Source: Fimbriosthenelais zetlandica (taxonomy: Eukaryota). Taken from it: DNA of 64,000 nt. This document shows, in pieces, positions 1-30,186 of this stretch (the first letter of the stretch is position 1; every line of letters starts with the position of its first letter). The notes under the pieces were generated by a model. The model was not told the origin of the DNA. It ran no database searches and worked only from the letters and a program-made list of their open reading frames with translations. The translations under genes and the position numbers were made by a program. The stretch is taken from the NCBI GenBank assembly GCA_977030845.1, contig OZ365112.1:25730001-25794000 (forward strand), read 5' to 3'.

Positions 1-798
1 ATTGCTTTATACATTCCAAACACCAAACCAGATCAAGAAACCATCAGATCCATGTGCATAGTCGATTGCAATGTATTTTGATCGAAATTTTTCCCCGGGA
101 TTTTGTTTATCTATATACTTGGTAATTTGGTTTATTTTGACTGATGACCTGGCTGGTCCAGCCATTAGCAGGGTACAACCATTATGTGGCCTCGTTACCG
201 GTAGAAAGATAGCCAGTAAGTAAGATGCCAGCTCTATAAACATCCACATGTGGGCCAACACAAATTAACCCAATCCAATAAACACATTGAAGAATGGCAA
301 ACATGGGTTGTTGGAGGTCCAGCTTTAGGGGGATTGGCTCGAAATGTGGATGGCTTCCTGATGATGCATCGAGTTACAAGTATAAACAGGTCAAGAAGAT
401 CTAACATTGACCTCACGGGACATCTCACAGCCTCTGGTCGCCCCTCTAGTGTTGACCGCTATTGCTGATCCATCAACAACAATTTGTACAATATTTGCTA
501 ACATGAACATGAAGTGAAAACGCTTTTGTTTTTATTTTTATTGAACAAAAGAGCAGTTTCATGGATGATGCCCCTAATAGAAAAACAATTTAGACTCCGT
601 TATCTCTGGCCTGTCTGAGAAATGAATGTTATTAATACATAACTTTTCAATGCACACATTAGCGCATGCGCCGAAATAGAACCTTCACTTAGCTCGAGCT
701 CCTACATATTACCTACAAATATGGACGATATAGAGGCATTACAAAGGAATAAAATATTCCTTATATTGTGATTATAATAGAGCGTGCAGGGAAGCAAA

Positions 799-1260
799 TT
801 TAAAGGTTTTTAACCACTACTACATTGGACAATGGAGACGTCTCAACCTGTGTATAGGTAGGCCACATACTCCCTGGTCGCCTTGTTGTTTACCTACGGT
901 GTGCACTCACTGCACTCACTGGACATTCTCTGCCAACGTTAATACAAAAACTCCTACAGTGTGCTCCCTTGATAACTACTTCGAATTGAGATCAAACGGA
1001 TACTTTGGTGGGTTTTTGGTTGCATCTACTTTGCATCAAGCATGTTTAAAGGATTCTAACCACTATATTGGACAATGGAGACGTCTCAACCTGTGTATAG
1101 GTGGGCCACATCGTGTTTGGTCGCCATGTTATTTACCTACCGTGTACACTCACTGGACATTGCCTACAAAAACTCCTACTGTGTGCTCCTTTGATAACTG
1201 CTTCGTATTGAGATCAAAACAGATACTTTGGTGAGTTTCTTTGTTGCACTTATACTTTGC
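799..1260. repeat. Tandem duplication, two diverged copies, period 246 bp (799-1044; 1045-1260)
   Basis: Both copies start TTTAAAGG and share blocks such as ATTGGACAATGGAGACGTCTCAACCTGTGTATAGGT, CACTCACTGGACATT, TACAAAAACTCCTAC and AGATCAAA(C)..GATACTTTGGTG. The second copy has small deletions. Confidence 0.95.
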
Positions 1261-1274
1261 TGTCACCTATCACC

Positions 1275-1664
1275 ATGGCCGAATCAGAACTTTACTTTAT
1301 CCCGAGAGCCATGGAGCTCAAATCTTGTCAGTTTGTGGCATGCACCTCACATAGCACACGCCTGTATGATAAGCCGATCATTCCTTCTGAGCCAAATAAT
1401 GACAATATAATCCCATCTATTACAAAAAGCTTAGATTTTTCATACAGCAAACTGGAGGGAATGGCCAAACATATCTCGATACAGGGGGCAGTTATTGACT
1501 CCATGCAGAAGAGACTCACCAAACTCGAGCTTGAGAACTCTCAACTTAGAAAAAACCTCATTGAGCTAGAGGAATTTCACCTTACACTTGACTGTAATTC
1601 CCGTAAAAAACATTTGATAATCAATAGCATGACCGAGCTCGAAAGTGAGACTTTTTTCATTTGA
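1275..1664 (+). mobile_element. LINE ORF1-like coiled-coil fragment (129 aa from ATG in ACCATGG context)
   Basis: Heptad-rich segment LEGMAKHISIQGAVIDSMQKRLTKLELENSQLRKNLIELEE is followed by DCNSRKKHLIINSMTELESE, which resembles the LE..SRR.NL.I.G.PE junction of L1-type ORF1 proteins. It ends at a premature TGA. Recognised by eye. Confidence 0.55.
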
Positions 1665-4566: not shown

Positions 4567-4655
4567 GACCATGTATTCATGAAACTATAGTTTCATAGTA
4601 TTCATGGTATAGTTTCATAGTATTCATGAAACTATAGTTTCATGAATAAGTGGTC
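4567..4655. repeat. Palindromic micro-array: three 22-28-bp units inside an imperfect inverted repeat
   Basis: Units at 4574, 4599 and 4621 (TATTCATG..TATAGTTTCAT). 4621-4648 TATTCATGAAACTATAGTTTCATGAATA is a perfect 28-bp palindrome. Outer GACCA (4567) pairs with TGGTC (4651-4655). Confidence 0.95.
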
Positions 4656-17949: not shown

Positions 17950-19260
17950 CTGCCTTAAGATCATGTGTGAGAAACTGGTATAGCCACAACTCGCCTGATG
18001 AAGTCCCAATAGGGAGGTGTCCCTGGGGTAGACGTCCCTATGTTACACACTTGGAGCATCTACATTATAGAACCACCTCACGGTGGATTAGGCATTCCCA
18101 GGTATACATATACACACGAGACTCACAACCCACCCTCTCACCATCTCTACATGGGAAAAGTTTCCCTGATAAGCTGCCTCAGTGGCTTACCTCAAGAGGT
18201 GGAAGTTTTGATTCAAAGGTTATGTATACCAGTCTCCTGTGCTCTGACATTGGTTGGTTTAATAAACAAGAGATAAGGAAAGTCAGTGACATTGTATATG
18301 GGTAGGTTTATATATATGTGGGTCTGAGAGAGTGAATTGAAGTGGGGTCCTCACCACTGACTTACTTGTTGTGGGAATACGGTTATATCAATAGTCGTAG
18401 CTTGATAAGTGGACTCATGCTACCGTGTTGACATGCTACCATGTAACCATTGACGTGTTATTTTGGGCTTAATTTTGACATGTCCAGGCTTAAGTTGATG
18501 TGGCATCTTTGCGAGTTCATCAACAGGGGAGATTGCATAAAAAATCCACTGAAAATACAACCATTCTTCCTTATGCAACAGGTTCCCATACACCTATCTA
18601 TACCTGCCTCCCCACCTTTGTCTATAGTATCTGTTTTTTTGAAGTAGCATAGAGGACGAACCTCCTTAGACAAATATCCCTGCCCAGAAACCGTAAGCCA
18701 TTTGTATGCCTTGCTTCATAAGAGAATTGATATTGGAAAAAATGTTTTTGTTCCCCTCGTGTGTAGGACATAAAAAGAGCAAGCAGTGGGCTTGCTTAAG
18801 ATTTACTGGCTACCATCCGGAACCTATTGTCACAATAGGGAATTCATCACTCCATCAATATGAAATCCAGTCTGCCAAGAGGTATCTGTCTTCCACCGCA
18901 ATAGTTTATGCTTGTCAGAGCCCATGTTGCTGAGCCTTTGATGCTGGCCTTATTGCTTTTTTTGCTGCACCTTTCAGAGGGACACTTTTAGAAAATTAAT
19001 CCCTATAACTACATTGCCAACCATGGCTAAAATAGCTAGAGTGAACTTGAGTTATTGGACTTGCTTCGGATGAATTTCCGGGCAAATCTCTCAATGAGGA
19101 AGGGAATCCATCATCAAGGGGGCGAGGGACCGAGACCACTTATAGACATGTTTTTATATTGTGCCTTTAAAGTTGTGCACTTTCTAGTAGATTTATATTT
19201 TCATGAGAGAACGGGGAAAAAAGATTGGATCGGCCATGTTGTATAAGGTGATTGGTAATG
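17950..19260 (+). mobile_element. L1 ORF2 3' half remnant (post-RT to C-terminal Cys region)
   Basis: Collinear motifs: WGRRPYV..L / PPHGGLGIP (W..K.PR...L...GGL.LP), VSHLYALL at 18693 (ISKLY), KQW (KWE), QYEIQSAKRYLSST (QYK.LHR.Y.TP), SPCC and EGTLLE at 18977 (EGTL.H). Confidence 0.6.
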
Positions 19261-19675
19261 GGGCTTATTTGTCCCAGTGTTTATACGCCAGAAGTCGGAA
19301 GGCTTTCATTGTTTATGCCGACAATGGTTCTGTTTACGGGCCTTTTAGGAAGGCAATACCCTCTCCTCTCACTCGCCCCTTCTCTCCTTCCCCTCTCTAT
19401 GATCCTTCACCAAATCGCTGTCAGTCTCTGATCTTTGTTCCTACATCCACGAGTGTTGTGAACGCCATATCTGATGTCTGAAGCAATCGTAAATCAAAGC
19501 TGTAAAAGGCAGCAGGTCCTCTGGACAACTCTCAACACAGAGAGCCAGGCTCCGGCCTCTCATGTAAAGAGGTCCGCGAGGAGAGAGGCCAAGCACTGTA
19601 TGGATTGACTGAATGATGGACGCTCCCCGCCTATAATGTCCCCTCTCCATACCACCACCATTCATCAAGTACGGC

Positions 19676-20022
19676 GAAAAGGGGAAGAGAGGCAGAGGGG
19701 AAGGCAAGGAACTACTGAGAGGCAAGGGGAGAAGGGAAGAGGCAGGCAGAGGAAGAGAGAAGGAAAGGAAAAGCGTATACTGAGTGGGAGAGGAAAGGAG
19801 GAAGGGCAGGGGAAGGGAGGGAGAGGTATAGCAGAGAAAGGCAGAAAGGGTATAGAAAGAGTGGGTTTGGTGAGGAAAGGCTTGGGGGCTGAAGAAGAAA
19901 GGAGAAATGAGAGGACGCATGGGAGAGAATCCCACCCCAGCAACTTGGTACAGAATCTGTCCCATGTATCTTTCTTTACAAGGGTCCGCAGAATGCAAAG
20001 CAAAGAGGAGAAGAGGAAAAAA
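19676..20022. repeat. Polypurine (GA-rich) low-complexity tract
   Basis: Nearly pure A/G on the + strand over 19676-19915, tapering to ~20022. It explains the overlapping low-complexity ORFs. Confidence 0.9.
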
Positions 20023-21535
20023 TGTCCATAAGTGCTCGACCTTAATAGACAATGTATCTTCATCAATCACATTTTCCACCCGGTTCTGACCAGCTTAGCG
20101 CATGCACAGATTGATACTCTGAATCATGTTTTTTTTTTGCATCCTCCTTTTCTTTCTCTCCCAGTGGTCTTTGAAGAAGCAGCTTTCCAATTATGAATAA
20201 TTGAGGGGAAACATATGGTCAGACGGGGCAATGATTGTATTTTGGGCCGCCCATATCCAAGCCAGCGAATAACTCATGACCCAATCTGCATAACAATATT
20301 ACCTGCTTCAATCGCCAGGTAAACAAGAGACCTTTGCATTGAAACTTTTTAATCAAACAATGACATTTAGGTTGCCATATAAACCATTGAAACATCCACT
20401 GAGTTTGAACAGTATCATTGCCCACCATTGTAATTGCCCTTTGAAAATAGAAAAAGGTTGCAGGTCATTTTCTTTATTGTACCATCGCATGCAACATTCA
20501 TAGCTTGACCAAATGAATTTGGGAGCGTATATTTGTTTTCAGAAGGATGATGCATCACAAATATATATAAGTGTGTGTGTTCATTTATGTCCCACTTGCC
20601 CAGAGGCGCACATCAGGATGCCAAGCTATATACTATTATGATGAATCACATAGGAGTCCTCCTCCTCCATGTTTTGCCCCTCGTAGATGTAGTATTTCTA
20701 TCTACTATCCGCACTATTAAATGCCGTCTCTAATGGCGATACCTCAAGCCAAGCTAAACGTGATCATTTAAAGTAATGGCCATTCAATCCATCAGGGGAA
20801 CTCGTGATGATATGGTCCTCTCATATGATTTATGTCAATATATCACATTCATATTGAAAAAATACTGCCATACACAACGATGGGCAAGGTCTATTTAGCC
20901 TTGCCCTCAAGCATTTGCATGACACTCTTTTTGTAGTGATGAGTGATAAGCAAAGGAACACAGACACAGTCTTTGACATTGTAATCATAGGCTTGAGCCC
21001 TGAATTTATGTTTTCATTATGTAGATGTAGGGGAGAAAGAAAACAAAGCCTGGGGGCAGTTTTGCATGGTTTTAATAGCTTAAATGGCATCTTTATATCC
21101 AGCGGCTTCTTTACACTATTGAAGCAAGGTATCATGTATCTATAATGATCCATCATAAGCACCGGTGCCTGTATATAAAGGTGATGTATACGTCTCATAA
21201 TGTTATAGTTGCTCTGTGAAGCACTTGCTTCTATATGCATGCCATATAATATGCATTATCAGTGTATATACACCCTCTTAAACATCATTGCCTTTGGCAT
21301 TGCATTCAAGCCACTCACTTATCTCTTGATCTGGTTTTAAATAATTATGAAGACAGCGATCCCATCAGACGTATTGTCTTCCTTGCAAATGAGTCTCATA
21401 ATTCAATTATATTAGAGCGTGTACATGGGAGACTTAAATGGTTATCATCTACATGAGCCAAGTGGAGGTTTTGGTGGCCATGTTAATGATGGTATTTTCT
21501 GGGCCTGTACCACAGTCTATACTGTGAATACTCCT

Positions 21536-26572: not shown

Positions 26573-28416
26573 TCTGTGTCATCGAAGCCAGGATGACAGA
26601 GGGGGGCAGGGATTTTGTGAGGAGTAGGGGCCAGAAGGCCAGGCCATGGAAAAGTTTCTGCGGATGCAAAGCATTTTTCCTCATAGGATCTAGTGCTAGG
26701 TTCTTGCAATGATCAAACACATCCTGTTTTCAGCGCTTAACATCTTCCAACAAGTTCTTTGTATTGTGTAATTCTTGTCAAGAATGCTAACAGTTGGCGG
26801 TATACTTCGCAGGATCCCTTGTCACAATAAGTCAGGTCGTGTGTGTCATCCACGTCGCCTGGCAGTGGCGGTGTAGGGATCCGGGTAAAGTAGTCCCAGT
26901 AAAGTAGTTCCGTCCTCGGTGACGAAATGATCAAGACCACTTTGTGGAGTCCTGTTTTACTTCAGGAGCTGAGAGACGAAGAGATGACAGACACTGAATG
27001 GCCAGACATGTCCTCACAAACTGATAGTGACGCCATGTCAGTTGGAGGGCCATTTGTAGCCAGTTTACTCTGGCCCTCCCCGAATCACCTCTCATAGGGC
27101 CACACATCCTCCTCGCGGGGCTGCTGGCTCCCCCGGCCATTCTTCGTGTTTTGTCCTGAGTTTTCTTTTCGGATTTTTTTCTTGCAAGACATTATTGTAT
27201 TATTTCAGCTGATGTTCATCACTCTTCTCCCATGTGTGTCTGCGTGGTGATGGGACGTAGGGATTGAAAGGCCAAAGTCCCCTATACCGGGACTTCACTT
27301 TCAAATGGATTTTTAATGGATTTAAAGGCCACAGCCCACTATGCCTTGTATTCAAATGATTTTTCCAGTAGACTACTTCTCCCTACTCTTGAAAATTTGA
27401 CTTCAAATCTAACACTGCTATTTCTGAGCTATACTTTCAACTCCGGTTGCAATTCCAGTTGAGATTCTCTCCCAAAGCAACTTCCTTGAATCTTGAAGGC
27501 CTACAAATGAATGCTTTGTCAACCCAGCTCGACTGTTGCGCCCCACAGTGGGTCATGCCCTTAATTGCCTTAAATGATGAAGCGGAGACAACAAAAGTCA
27601 GGGTAGAGACACGTGTCATTCGAGGTTAGCTTCTCTATGCATTCACTGACATGACACATTCATGCATTATGTATGAGCAAGTGAAGTGAATGTAATAACT
27701 TTTGGAATCCTTTAATGTTCACACGGCAAAAGCCTTTTGCGTATTCTGCCCAATTGGATCATTCATCATTCTTTGAACGAGAAAACCCCCCATGTAGTTT
27801 TTGACGCCCCTTTATGAATGTCTATCGACAGGGGGCTTTATCATAAAAAATGAATGGCTGATCCAATACATTGGCAAAATTTGACACATCTCTTCTTTGT
27901 TTAAACCCGATCCAACATTATATATGAAGAGACCATCCTATAGCTTTCTGTGATGTATGAACACACACTGCTTTCATTAGGACCAGCTAACGATACATAC
28001 CCTGCCCCTGCTCCTGCACCAGTTGATAGGCTAGTTCCTCCAGTAAATGACCATCTGACCACTCCATCACTTATGGTCATTTACCCAGGTGACCAAAGGA
28101 TCCAATGATACCCTCATGCCTTACATCACTGGTCATTTGACAGTGGACAGGTGCCTTTCATTACCCTCTCACTTGACATATTGACCTCAACCAACACAGG
28201 TAATCCCCTAAGATGACCTTCGTTTAAACATCCCGGGAGAGCTCTCAGCAGACGTCCGCAGGCTTCCATTCTTCATTCTAATCTTTGGTGGGAGGTTCCT
28301 ATATGTGTGGTCTCCTACTTGTGGCTAGGGTCGATGATCTCTGAGCTCTATTCAACCTTAGAGTGACTCCTCTAAGCTACTGCTCTATTGGCATTAAACT
28401 GGCCATTGGCTTTATG

Positions 28417-28839
28417 TACGGAAGCCGAGAATGTTCACAGAAAAAAAAAAAAAAAAAAAAAAAAATTTACAAATTCCAAATTTTTTTCTTTTTTATTGTA
28501 TTAAAAAATAAAAAAAAAATAAAAAAATAAACTTTTTTTTTCCAAATCTCGTTTCAAATCTCGTTTTCATTTTCATTCTCGTTTTCGTTTTCATTTTTTT
28601 TTTTTTTTCAAAAATCTGAAATCTCGGGAGCGCGAGACTTACTTAAAAGACATTTTTATTTGAATGTAGCACAACCAATCATTAACTATCATGATAACTT
28701 GCTGATGTCAATAGTCAAATTGTATTAATTTTGGTTATTAACTGAATTAAATACAAGTTTGAGTCGAATCTCGCGAGTGCGCGACCTTGATGTGGGCGAT
28801 AATACGTGCAAAATGTGAGCGAATCTGATGCAATACCCA
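28417..28839 (+). repeat. Left inverted arm
   Basis: Reverse complement of 29241-29601. The ~300-bp core differs by two substitutions plus homopolymer-edge changes, and this arm carries ~60 bp of extra AT-rich sequence after an A25 run. Confidence 0.97.
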
Positions 28840-29240
28840 ATTCTTGACATAGGCCCCCTTACACACTCTACAGCCATTTTTGTAATCATTTTTATATGAT
28901 TTTAACCAATGGCCAAGTTATTCTCCTGTAACCAGCTATGTAATAACAGAATAACTGTATAGGATCGGCTGATTATTGAGCACAAGCCTCCCTATGGGCT
29001 ATGGCCTGGGCCTGTTTCATGGGTTTATCCTTTATATTATTTACATTAAATATGAAGTCATTAGGTTATATAAAGCTGAATCGATAAATTTTATTGATTA
29101 ATAATATGAAATAATGCTGTAAAGTGATATTTTTGACATTGGCAATGTGGTCATTGTTGCCTACCCATGACAATCTAAGACGTTGCCAAGGCGCTCGAGT
29201 TGTCAAGGACCCAGCGACGTCTTCCTGACGTCACAGGAAG

Positions 29241-29601
29241 TGGGTATTGCATCAGATTCGCTTACATTTTGCACGTATTATCGCCCACATCAAGGTCGCG
29301 CACTCGCGAGATTCGACTCAAAATTGTATTTAATTCAGTTAATAACCAAAATTAATACAATTTGACTATTGACATCAGCAAGTTATCATGATAGTTAATG
29401 ATTGGTTGTGCTACATTCAAATAAAAATGTCTTTTAAGTAAGTCTCGCGCTCCCGAGATTTCAGATTTTTGAAAAAAAAAAAAAAAATGAAAACGAAAAC
29501 GAGAATGAAAATGAAAACGAGATTTGAAACGAGATTTGAAAAAAAAAGTTTTATTTTTTTTTTTTTTTTTTTTTTTACTGTGAACATTCTCGGCTTCCGT
29601 A
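29241..29601 (-). repeat. Right inverted arm
   Basis: TGGGTATTGCATCAGATTCGC...GGCTTCCGTA mirrors the left arm. Confidence 0.97.
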
Positions 29602-30186
29602 TTTATGTGATAACTAGGGAACTTGTTCCACATACTGCCCAGAAATTGGCCCTACACCAAGTCAATATATTTAACTTTTAAAATGAGGAAAAACTGCCTT
29701 TGGGTGTTCAACATTAACCTAAACCACTTTAGTAATTGAGAGCTTCTACCCATCTCTCACCACCTTCCCACCCTCTGCTTCCCTATCTCAAATTCAGCCC
29801 ACATGGCGACCATGTGCTAAGTCATAGCGACCTCTACGTCATCGTTGTGGACGTCATTAACGTCAGGATTTATCGGCTATCCTATATACTGCCGTGAAGG
29901 ATGGGGTTACCAGGCGCTCCGTCCCAGCTTCGAGGGTGGTGTCGAGTGAAGGAGGAATTCGTAAAATGAATTATTACAAATTTGCTACGTTGCTAATTTT
30001 TAGGTCAGACAGATACACTAGTGAAACTGAAAGTCTAGATGTTGCTTTCCAGTCAAAATATTAGACAGTCTGGCTGTTCAAAGTTGGGATTTGTAGAAAG
30101 TTCTTGGAATAATACAACTTTGAAACATCTTTATTCAGTTTACATTACTATTATTCTCAAGTAAATCTAACGTTGCCTCGAACTTT

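What the first reader, a model, noticed from the sequence alone, without database searches (positions are those of the whole stretch)
28411..29607. Young foldback element with long TIRs and a 6-bp TSD that fits no common superfamily
Seen: a 1,185-bp unit with exact 24-bp terminal complements (TACGGAAGCC...GGCTTCCGTA), ~360-420-bp arms, a 401-bp spacer and TTTATG directly flanking both ends. Known: hAT usually makes 8-bp TSDs, MULE about 9-11 bp, Tc1/mariner TA, piggyBac/Kolobok TTAA, CACTA 2-3 bp and Transib 5 bp. Polinton/Maverick makes 6-bp TSDs but ends in AG..CT. Inference: this may be a non-autonomous member of an unclassified or rare TIR family, and it is far younger than the surrounding LINE relics. 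Alternative readings are a TA TSD with CGG ends, or an 8-bp TSD with one mismatch (CTTTATGT/ATTTATGT) with ACGG ends.
Basis: partly seen in the sequence, partly recalled or inferred. Interest (0 to 1): 0.75.

Follow-up and report, generated by a model that had tools for sequence, protein, structure and literature searches.

The report
Non-autonomous IS3EU/GingerRoot foldback transposon
This is a real, recently inserted, protein-less DNA transposon, and its 6-bp target duplication and TACGGAAGCC ends place it in the rare but already classified IS3EU/GingerRoot superfamily, so it is a new member of a known kind rather than a new kind of element.

Summary
Window 28417-29601 is a 1,185-bp element. 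It has exact 24-bp terminal inverted repeats and arms of 430 and 368 bp that are 98.6% identical. The loop is 387 bp, and TTTATG flanks both ends (chance 2.8e-4).

The claim that it "fits no common superfamily" is only partly right. The literature defines that superfamily by 6-bp target site duplications, 5'-TA..TA-3' termini and long inverted repeats. Fungal IS3EU families end TAYGG..CCRTA. This element ends TACGG..CCGTA.

Its first 10 bases (TACGGAAGCC) are identical to the starts of eight published rust-fungus IS3EU consensus sequences, and 12 of 13 match IS3EU-2_PGr. That satisfies Repbase's rule for classing non-autonomous elements: same duplication length, and positions 1-11 with at most one mismatch.

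The element has no coding capacity, so it would depend on a transposase encoded elsewhere. Its arms are strongly CpG-rich (observed/expected 2.0, against 0.47 in the flanks), which fits a recent arrival.

I found no other copy in the window or in any collection I could search. I could not test the duplication length across copies, the autonomous partner or an empty site. I could not identify the host genome.

Verdict: new member of a known kind, modest interest.

The parts
28411..28416 (.). Left copy of the 6-bp target site duplication, TTTATG
   Evidence: Read directly. It is identical to 29602-29607. Chance of a 6/6 match is 2.8e-4.
28417..28440 (+). Left terminal 24 bp (TACGGAAGCCGAGAATGTTCACAG). 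This is the exact terminal inverted repeat and the presumed transposase recognition end.
   Evidence: Exact, and found only at the two ends. The first 10 nt are identical to eight published fungal IS3EU consensus starts. It matches the start of IS3EU-2_PGr at 12 of 13 positions, and that 13-mer matches only at the element's two ends (expected 0.04).
28417..28846 (+). Left arm, 430 bp. Order from the outside: 24-bp terminus, A25 run, about 62 bp of A/T-rich sequence absent from the right arm, short tandem subterminal repeats (12- and 18-nt units), T run, CpG-rich core.
   Evidence: It holds four copies of AATCTCG. CpG observed/expected is 2.0.
28847..29233 (.). Non-palindromic loop or spacer, 387 bp, with no coding capacity
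   Evidence: GC is 0.377 and CpG observed/expected 0.58, close to the flanks (0.47) and unlike the arms. GACGTC (29216-29221) and TGACGTCA (29226-29233) lie just inside the right-arm junction.
29234..29601 (-). Right arm, 368 bp, the reverse complement of the left arm
   Evidence: 362 of 367 aligned positions are identical to the left arm. It holds four copies of AATCTCG on the minus strand.
29578..29601 (-). Right terminal 24 bp, an exact complement of the left terminus, ending ...GGCTTCCGTA
29602..29607 (.). Right copy of the 6-bp target site duplication, TTTATG

Best explanation
The feature is a single, recent insertion of a non-autonomous DNA transposon of the IS3EU/GingerRoot superfamily, in long-inverted-repeat ('foldback') form.

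Shown:
- Two near-identical arms end in 5'-TACGG...CCGTA-3'.
- A 6-bp duplication of the target, TTTATG, flanks them.
- The element has no coding capacity.
- Its ends match published IS3EU ends.

Inferred:
- It was moved in trans by an IS3-like/integrase-related DDD/E transposase encoded by an autonomous IS3EU element elsewhere in the host genome.
- That enzyme would recognise the terminal ~24 bp, and probably the subterminal AATCTCG-type repeats. It would cleave at the TA ends and join them to target strands staggered by 6 bp. Host repair of the gaps would make the TTTATG duplication.
- The 387-bp loop has host-like composition. It is probably a remnant or a captured filler, not a functional part.
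- The length difference between the arms looks like slippage or deletion between A runs after the arms formed.
For: 1. Real insertion structure. The 24-bp ends are exact and found nowhere else in the window. The arms are 98.6% identical. The 6-bp flanks are identical, p=2.8e-4.
2. Superfamily hallmarks from the literature:
[quoted passage not shown] - GingerRoot: 72 of the 77 intact elements have TA..TA termini, the TSD is 6 bp in all but six of the 77 (five 7 bp, one 8 bp), and TIRs are 100-150 bp. It occurs in fish, corals, anemones and oysters (PMC6839031).
   - Fungal IS3EU 'generate 6 bp TSDs ... [quoted passage not shown]
   - The element ends TACGG..CCGTA.
3. Extended terminal identity. 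Table S1 of PMC12730594 has eight IS3EU consensus entries starting TACGGAAGCC, the element's first 10 nt. The 13-nt start of IS3EU-2_PGr hits the window only at the element's two ends, with one mismatch (expected 0.04).
4. This meets Repbase's stated rule for classing non-autonomous DNA transposons: same TSD length, and terminal alignment of positions 1-11 with at most one mismatch (PMC4455052).
5. Non-autonomy. No reading frame over 99 aa (stop to stop) touches the element, and none has a family match.
6. Youth. All 17 CpGs per arm are retained. CpG observed/expected is 2.0 and 1.9 in the arms, against 0.47 in 10 kb of flanks.
7. Subterminal motif. Eight of the window's 12 AATCTCG sites lie in the element, four per arm in mirror positions.
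8. IS3EU elements are known to be mobile and to make 6-bp TSDs at new insertions (Styx/REP9 in Zymoseptoria: PMC10853768; PMC8232023).
Against: - There is only one copy, so the TSD length rests on a single insertion.
- No other copy turned up in the window, nor in viral, metagenome or prokaryote-genome collections, nor among called proteins.
- The defining protein, an IS3EU transposase encoded by a partner with the same ends, could not be looked for because the host genome is neither identified nor available.
- The terminal comparison is with fungal families. I could not obtain the termini of animal IS3EU families.
- The arms (368-430 bp) are longer than the 30-150-bp TIRs reported.
- The AT-rich target TTTATG differs from the GC-rich preference reported for GingerRoot in Selaginella.
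Confidence: 0.83

Rival explanations
1. It is a non-autonomous hAT element. Either it belongs to the hAT6 group, which makes 6-bp duplications, or it is an ordinary hAT with an 8-bp duplication that has one mismatch (CTTTATGT/ATTTATGT) and ends ACGG..CCGT.
For: hAT families with 6-bp TSDs exist (hAT6, cited in PMC12730594). hAT is a common superfamily. TACGG matches the hAT terminal motif YARNG at 4 of 5 positions (motif from PMC3014272). Subterminal short repeats are typical of hAT. The 8-bp reading is 7 of 8 identical.
Against: TACGG has C where YARNG needs a purine. Under the 8-bp reading the ends ACGGA fail three of the four specified positions. hAT TIRs are usually 10-25 bp. The 10-nt identity with eight IS3EU consensus starts (about 1e-6 per comparison by chance) would be left unexplained. 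I could not obtain hAT6 terminal sequences to compare.
Confidence: 0.05
2. It is a Tc1/mariner-type element with a TA duplication and ends CGGAAGCC..GGCTTCCG. The extra TTTATG on both sides would then be a coincidence of the target sequence.
For: TA lies at both junctions. [quoted passage not shown]
Against: The pre-insertion site would have had to read TTTATG-TA-TTTATG by chance, p=2.8e-4. The identity with IS3EU ends includes the TA itself.
Confidence: 0.01
3. It is a member of an undescribed superfamily whose ends and duplication length happen to match those of IS3EU.
For: No transposase can be tied to the element. The arms are longer than those described for IS3EU/GingerRoot. No other copy is available.
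Against: It needs three independent coincidences: a 6-bp TSD, the TAYGG..CCRTA motif (TAYGG frequency about 0.14% per position in this window), and a further 5 nt of identity with published IS3EU ends.
Confidence: 0.05
4. It is not a transposon. It would be a local inverted duplication, or an assembly artefact (a chimeric foldback read) that happens to have matching flanks.
For: It is the only copy seen. Long hairpin-forming sequences (predicted -478 kcal/mol as single-stranded DNA) are prone to artefacts. It is by far the strongest repeat in a window otherwise almost free of repeats; the only other is an 80%-identical tandem duplication at 792-1260.
Against: An artefact does not make a 6-bp direct duplication outside exact inverted ends (p=2.8e-4). 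It does not reproduce a published superfamily-specific terminal sequence. It does not give arms that differ by five substitutions and several indels.
Confidence: 0.02
5. It is a fragment or derivative of another group with about 6-bp duplications: Polinton/Maverick, Ginger2/TDD or Dada.
For: These groups are reported with TSDs of 6 bp (Polinton; Ginger2 is given as 6 bp in PMC6839031 but as 4 or 5 bp in PMC10045372) or, for Dada, of 6-7 bp as seen in the example sequences.
Against: Polinton termini are AG..; Ginger termini are TG..CA. Dada has no terminal inverted repeats and inserts into snRNA or tRNA genes (PMC3706591), and no RNA gene is present here. The element ends TA..TA.
Confidence: 0.01

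Closest known systems
IS3EU-2_PGr / IS3EU-5_PGr and six further rust-fungus IS3EU families (Kojima 2025, PMC12730594, Table S1)
   Same: 6-bp TSD. Ends TAYGG..CCRTA. First 10 nt TACGGAAGCC identical (12 of 13 with IS3EU-2_PGr). A terminus of about 25 nt followed by homopolymer runs and short tandem subterminal repeats.
   Different: Those families are published as consensus sequences of autonomous, multi-gene elements (transposase, alpha-kinase, TET/JBP dioxygenase) in Pucciniales fungi. This element is 1.2 kb, has no genes and has arms of about 400 bp. Beyond about position 13 there is no evident similarity. Its host looks like a large, gene-sparse, CpG-depleted genome and not a compact fungal one, but the host is unidentified.
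GingerRoot (Selaginella lepidophylla; relatives in fish, corals, anemones, oysters; PMC6839031)
   Same: 6-bp TSD, 5'-TA..TA-3' termini, long TIRs, and copies without a transposase.
   Different: GingerRoot TIRs are 100-150 bp and elements are 3.9-12.9 kb, often carrying gene fragments. Its TSDs are GC-rich; this one is AT-rich.
Styx/REP9 of Zymoseptoria (an IS3EU-related element with observed new insertions; PMC10853768, PMC8232023)
   Same: 6-bp TSDs without a sequence consensus. Highly conserved TIRs.
   Different: An element of about 8 kb with four genes and 36-43-bp TIRs.
hAT6 (hAT group with 6-bp TSDs; Kapitonov & Jurka 2007, cited in PMC12730594)
   Same: 6-bp TSD. Subterminal short repeats are a general hAT trait.
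   Different: The general hAT terminal motif YARNG is not fully met. Typical hAT TIRs are short.
Foldback (FB) elements of Drosophila and long-TIR MITEs in general (from my own knowledge, not tested here)
   Same: Architecture: long inverted arms with internal short repeats around a short loop, and no coding capacity.
   Different: As I recall, FB elements make 9-bp TSDs and their arms are built of tandem repeats. The resemblance is in shape only, not in ends or TSD.

Membership tests
IS3EU/GingerRoot | 6-bp target site duplication | tested here: met
   TTTATG on both sides, p=2.8e-4. One insertion only.
IS3EU/GingerRoot | 5'-TA..TA-3' termini (PMC10045372; PMC6839031) | tested here: met
   TACGG...CCGTA
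IS3EU/GingerRoot | Extended terminal motif TAYGG..CCRTA (fungal IS3EU, PMC12730594) | tested here: met
   TACGG / CCGTA (motif quoted)
IS3EU/GingerRoot | Repbase rule for non-autonomous elements: same TSD length, and terminal alignment of positions 1-11 with at most one mismatch to a classified family (PMC4455052) | tested here: met
   10 of 11 with IS3EU-2_PGr and IS3EU-5_PGr. The 13-mer search gave 12 of 13 at both ends only. Eight entries share the first 10 nt. The rule as written compares two non-autonomous elements; the comparators here are autonomous families.
IS3EU/GingerRoot | Terminal inverted repeats longer than about 30 bp | tested here: met
   24 bp exact, 48 bp at 98%, arms of 368-430 bp
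IS3EU/GingerRoot | An autonomous partner with the same ends that encodes an IS3-like/integrase-related DDD/E transposase | not testable with these tools
   The element has no coding capacity. The host genome is unidentified. No related locus was found.
IS3EU/GingerRoot | TSD length consistent over many copies | not testable with these tools
   No second copy in the window or in any searchable collection
hAT (including hAT6) | Terminal motif YARNG (PMC3014272) | tested here: not met
   TACGG has C at the R position. Under the 8-bp reading, ACGGA fails three of the four specified positions.
hAT (including hAT6) | 8-bp TSD, or 6 bp for hAT6 | tested here: inconclusive
   6/6 fits hAT6. The 8-bp reading needs one mismatch.
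Polinton/Maverick | AG.. termini, and a 15-20-kb element with protein-primed polymerase and integrase genes (size is from my own knowledge) | tested here: not met
   Ends TA..TA, 1.2 kb, no genes. Termini quoted.
Tc1/mariner | TA target duplication only | tested here: not met
   The flank identity extends over 6 bp beyond the TA.
Dada | No TIRs; insertion into snRNA or tRNA genes (PMC3706591) | tested here: not met
   Long TIRs are present. No RNA gene lies at or near the site.
Ginger1 / Ginger2 (TDD) | TG..CA termini and 4-5-bp TSD | tested here: not met
   TA..TA ends and a 6-bp TSD (features quoted)

The most novel reading that the evidence does not exclude
The 10-nt end TACGGAAGCC is shared between rust-fungus IS3EU families and an element in what looks like a large animal-type genome. 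One reading is that IS3EU transposases recognise an unusually constrained end sequence across kingdoms. The other is that this lineage moved horizontally between very distant hosts not long ago. The intact CpG-rich arms would then mark a currently or very recently active IS3EU lineage in this host, in a superfamily whose structure and biology are called 'largely unexplored' (PMC11934779).
Probability: 0.2. Interest if true: 0.55.

Novelty: new member of a known kind. Interest (0 to 1): 0.3.

Why it matters
IS3EU/GingerRoot is one of the least studied superfamilies of eukaryotic DNA transposons. Clean, young, non-autonomous copies help define what its transposase recognises. This copy shows a 24-bp exact end whose first 10 bases equal those of fungal families, followed by repeated AATCTCG-type motifs. 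That points to a conserved core recognition sequence. For annotation, it shows that a 6-bp duplication with TA..TA (TAYGG) ends should be filed under IS3EU and not left unclassified. It changes no principle of transposon biology.

Tried and rejected
1. Other copies in the window. The 24-mer with up to 3 mismatches and blastn of the whole element against the masked window found none.
2. Other copies elsewhere:
   - The terminal 20-mer in viral, metagenome and prokaryote-genome collections gave 0 hits.
   - An arm-core 21-mer in metagenomes gave 0 hits.
   - A word search with the non-repetitive part of the longest arm reading frame found no candidate.
   - An exact look-up of three element reading frames and seven window reading frames found none on record.
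3. Paralogous empty site. blastn of 1 kb of each flank, kept apart, against the rest of the window gave no hit.
4. Host identification and context:
   - Pfam on 135 reading frames of 75 aa or more gave nothing.
   - Pfam on 150 more frames of 61-74 aa gave only noise-level single hits.
   - Rfam at gathering score and at E up to 0.5, a tRNA scan and a tandem repeat scan gave nothing diagnostic.
   - 191 reading frames of 50-60 aa were listed but not scanned.
   - The host stays unidentified. I do not take the window for human. CpG observed/expected is 0.51 and no RNA-family match came up at all (so none to the 7SL RNA from which, from my own knowledge, Alu repeats derive). From my own knowledge, young CpG-rich DNA transposons are not a feature of the human genome.
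5. Literature search for the terminal 10-mer returned only chance primer matches. A search for 'hAT6' gave no paper with its termini.
6. GingerRoot supplements are not held as text. The IS481EU paper's supplements hold aligned protein blocks of animal IS3EU transposases. I did not use them as queries because that would mean typing long sequences.
7. Rejected readings are listed under rivals: Polinton, Ginger, Dada, a TA duplication, and an assembly artefact.
8. (TAYGG over the window) served only to give a background frequency.
Full report
**1. Observation**

The sequence at 28300-29720 shows an element from 28417 to 29601, 1,185 bp.

- **Ends.** The outermost 24 bp, TACGGAAGCCGAGAATGTTCACAG, occurs exactly twice in the 64-kb window: once on each strand, at the two ends. 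None is expected in 100 shuffles, even with three mismatches allowed.
- **Arms.** The repeat finder reports inverted arms of 253 nt at 98%, 110 nt at 94% and 48 nt at 98%. A global alignment of 28417-28846 with the reverse complement of 29234-29601 gives 362 identical of 367 aligned positions (98.6%). There are five substitutions. The left arm has about 62 extra A/T-rich bases between A runs, and there are two 1-bp differences.
- **Loop.** 28847-29233, 387 bp.
- **Boundary.** The inverted repeat stops exactly at T28417/A29601.
- **Flanks.** The six bases outside each end are TTTATG on both sides. The chance of this at window composition is 2.8e-4.

**2. What else is in and around it**

- **No coding capacity.** The longest reading frames touching the element are 93 aa from a start codon (99 aa stop to stop), low-complexity translations of the A/T runs. 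Nothing in or around it matches a protein family.
- **Arm layout, from the outside in:** the 24-bp terminus, an A25 run, short tandem repeats of 12- and 18-nt units, a T run, and a CpG-rich core.
- **A repeated motif.** AATCTCG occurs four times per arm in mirror positions. That is eight of the 12 occurrences in the whole window.
- **CpG content.** Each arm holds 17 CpGs and all are shared between the arms. CpG observed/expected is 2.0 and 1.9 in the arms, 0.58 in the loop and 0.47 in the 10 kb of flanks. The arms have therefore not undergone the CpG decay that marks the surrounding DNA. The loop has host-like composition.
- **Hairpin.** As a single strand the element would fold into one long hairpin, predicted at -478 kcal/mol as DNA.
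- **The rest of the window.** It is almost free of internal repeats. It has no tRNA gene and no RNA-family match worth the name; the only hit at E up to 0.5 is a mir-8356 model at E=0.38 on a tandem repeat. It has no microsatellite. It has no credible Pfam hit in 285 reading frames of 61 aa or more.

I could not confirm the 'LINE relics', and I could not identify the host. GC of about 0.42, CpG observed/expected of 0.51 and the lack of genes over 64 kb suggest a large, methylated, gene-sparse eukaryotic genome. I do not take it for human.

**3. Which family**

The list left out IS3EU/GingerRoot. The literature says:

[quoted passage not shown] - Cerbin et al. (2019, PMC6839031): 72 of the 77 intact GingerRoot elements have TA..TA termini. 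All but six of the 77 have a 6-bp duplication (five have 7 bp, one has 8 bp). TIRs are 100-150 bp. Relatives occur in fish, corals, sea anemones and oysters.

The element ends TACGG..CCGTA, an exact fit to that motif. TAYGG occurs at about 0.14% of positions in this window (184 of 128,000).

Table S1 of the 2025 paper prints the consensus starts. IS3EU-2_PGr and IS3EU-5_PGr begin TACGGAAGCC followed by C. Eight entries in all begin TACGGAAGCC. The element begins TACGGAAGCC followed by G.

I searched the window with the 13-nt start of IS3EU-2_PGr, as printed by the tool, allowing one mismatch. It matched only at 28417 (+) and at 29601 (-). The expected number is 0.04.

Repbase states its rule for non-autonomous DNA transposons. 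Two elements go in the same superfamily if they have the same TSD length and their ends align over positions 1-11 with at most one mismatch (PMC4455052). As written, the rule compares two non-autonomous elements. Here the comparators are autonomous families, but the same test applies. The element passes it for IS3EU.

**4. Rivals**

- **hAT6.** However, the hAT terminal motif YARNG (PMC3014272) is missed at one position by TACGG. It is missed at three of four specified positions under the 8-bp reading (ACGGA). The 10-nt identity with IS3EU ends would also be a coincidence of about 1e-6 per comparison.
- **TA duplication (Tc1/mariner).** This needs the target to have carried TTTATG twice, 2 bp apart, by chance (2.8e-4).
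- **Polinton and Ginger.** Their termini differ.
- **Dada.** It has no terminal inverted repeats and inserts into small-RNA genes (PMC3706591).
- **Local inverted duplication or assembly artefact.** This would not produce a direct 6-bp duplication outside exact ends that also match a published terminal sequence. It would not give arms that differ by five substitutions and several indels.

**5. Mechanism**

Shown:
- a non-coding element with IS3EU-type ends;
- a 6-bp duplication of its target.

Inferred from what is known of the superfamily:
- A DDD/E transposase related to bacterial IS3/IS481 transposases and to retroviral-type integrases is encoded by an autonomous IS3EU element elsewhere. 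It binds the ends, most likely the terminal ~24 bp helped by the AATCTCG-type subterminal repeats.
- It cuts at the TA ends and joins them to target strands 6 bp apart. Host repair then creates the TTTATG repeat.

New insertions with 6-bp duplications have been seen directly for the IS3EU-related Styx/REP9 elements of Zymoseptoria (PMC10853768; PMC8232023).

The long arms and the host-like loop suggest that this copy descends from a derivative that kept, or duplicated in inverted order, one end region of a longer element. The extra A/T-rich stretch in the left arm lies between A runs, which looks like slippage or deletion. These last two points are inference.

**6. What I could not do**

- No second copy was reachable: not in the window, not in viral, metagenome or prokaryote-genome collections, and not through protein-level searches of arm reading frames.
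- The flanks have no paralogue in the window that could serve as an empty site.
- I could not get terminal sequences of animal IS3EU families or of hAT6 families.
- Transposase alignments in a paper's supplement were not used as queries, because that would have meant typing long sequences.

**7. Verdict**

This is a genuine, young, non-autonomous transposon insertion. It is best classed as a new member of the IS3EU/GingerRoot superfamily (confidence about 0.83).

The one point of wider interest is that its first 10 bases equal those of rust-fungus IS3EU families. That suggests either a strongly conserved recognition sequence or distant horizontal spread. Interest: 0.3.

Noticed in passing
window 28417-28846 and 29234-29601 against 28847-29233: The arms are CpG-enriched (observed/expected about 2.0, 17 CpGs each, all shared). 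The loop (0.58) resembles the CpG-depleted host flanks (0.47). The loop may be captured or older host-like DNA; with only 8 CpGs in the loop the contrast is suggestive, not firm.
   Followed up: partly
window 29216-29240: Just inside the junction of loop and right arm lie GACGTC (29216-29221) and the palindrome TGACGTCA (29226-29233). The short inverted pair CTTCCTG / CAGGAAG brackets the second and spans the junction (29221-29240). From my own knowledge TGACGTCA is the cAMP-response-element core. Its significance here is unknown.
   Followed up: no
window 28455-28528: About 62 bp of A/T-rich sequence is present only in the left arm and lies between A runs. This is consistent with slippage or deletion in the right arm after the arms formed.
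   Followed up: partly
window 792-1260: A tandem duplication of about 245 bp (792-1034 against 1038-1260, 80% identical). Apart from the element, it is the only repeat the window's self-comparison found.
   Followed up: no
window 1212-1661 (+): A 150-aa open frame with a coiled-coil-like stretch. Pfam gives only weak sub-threshold hits (HAP1_N, E=0.0027).
   Followed up: partly
window 19441-20094: Long overlapping open frames on both strands (up to 217 aa stop to stop) in a low-complexity stretch. One strand reads S/P/L-rich and the other G/E/K/R-rich. The 2-kb bin that holds most of it (18001-20000) has a positive GC skew (+0.086), unlike most of the window. No family match. It looks like a purine/pyrimidine-skewed tract and not a gene.
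   Followed up: no
window 4573-4643: Three copies of a partly palindromic tandem unit (period about 22 nt). It gives a chance-level match to a microRNA model (mir-8356, 27 bits against a gathering score of 70, E=0.38).
   Followed up: no
whole window: The 64 kb holds no credible protein domain in 285 reading frames of 61 aa or more. It has no tRNA gene and no RNA-family match above chance level, no microsatellite and almost no internal repeats. GC is 0.42 and CpG observed/expected 0.51. The host genome could not be identified with the tools at hand.
   Followed up: partly
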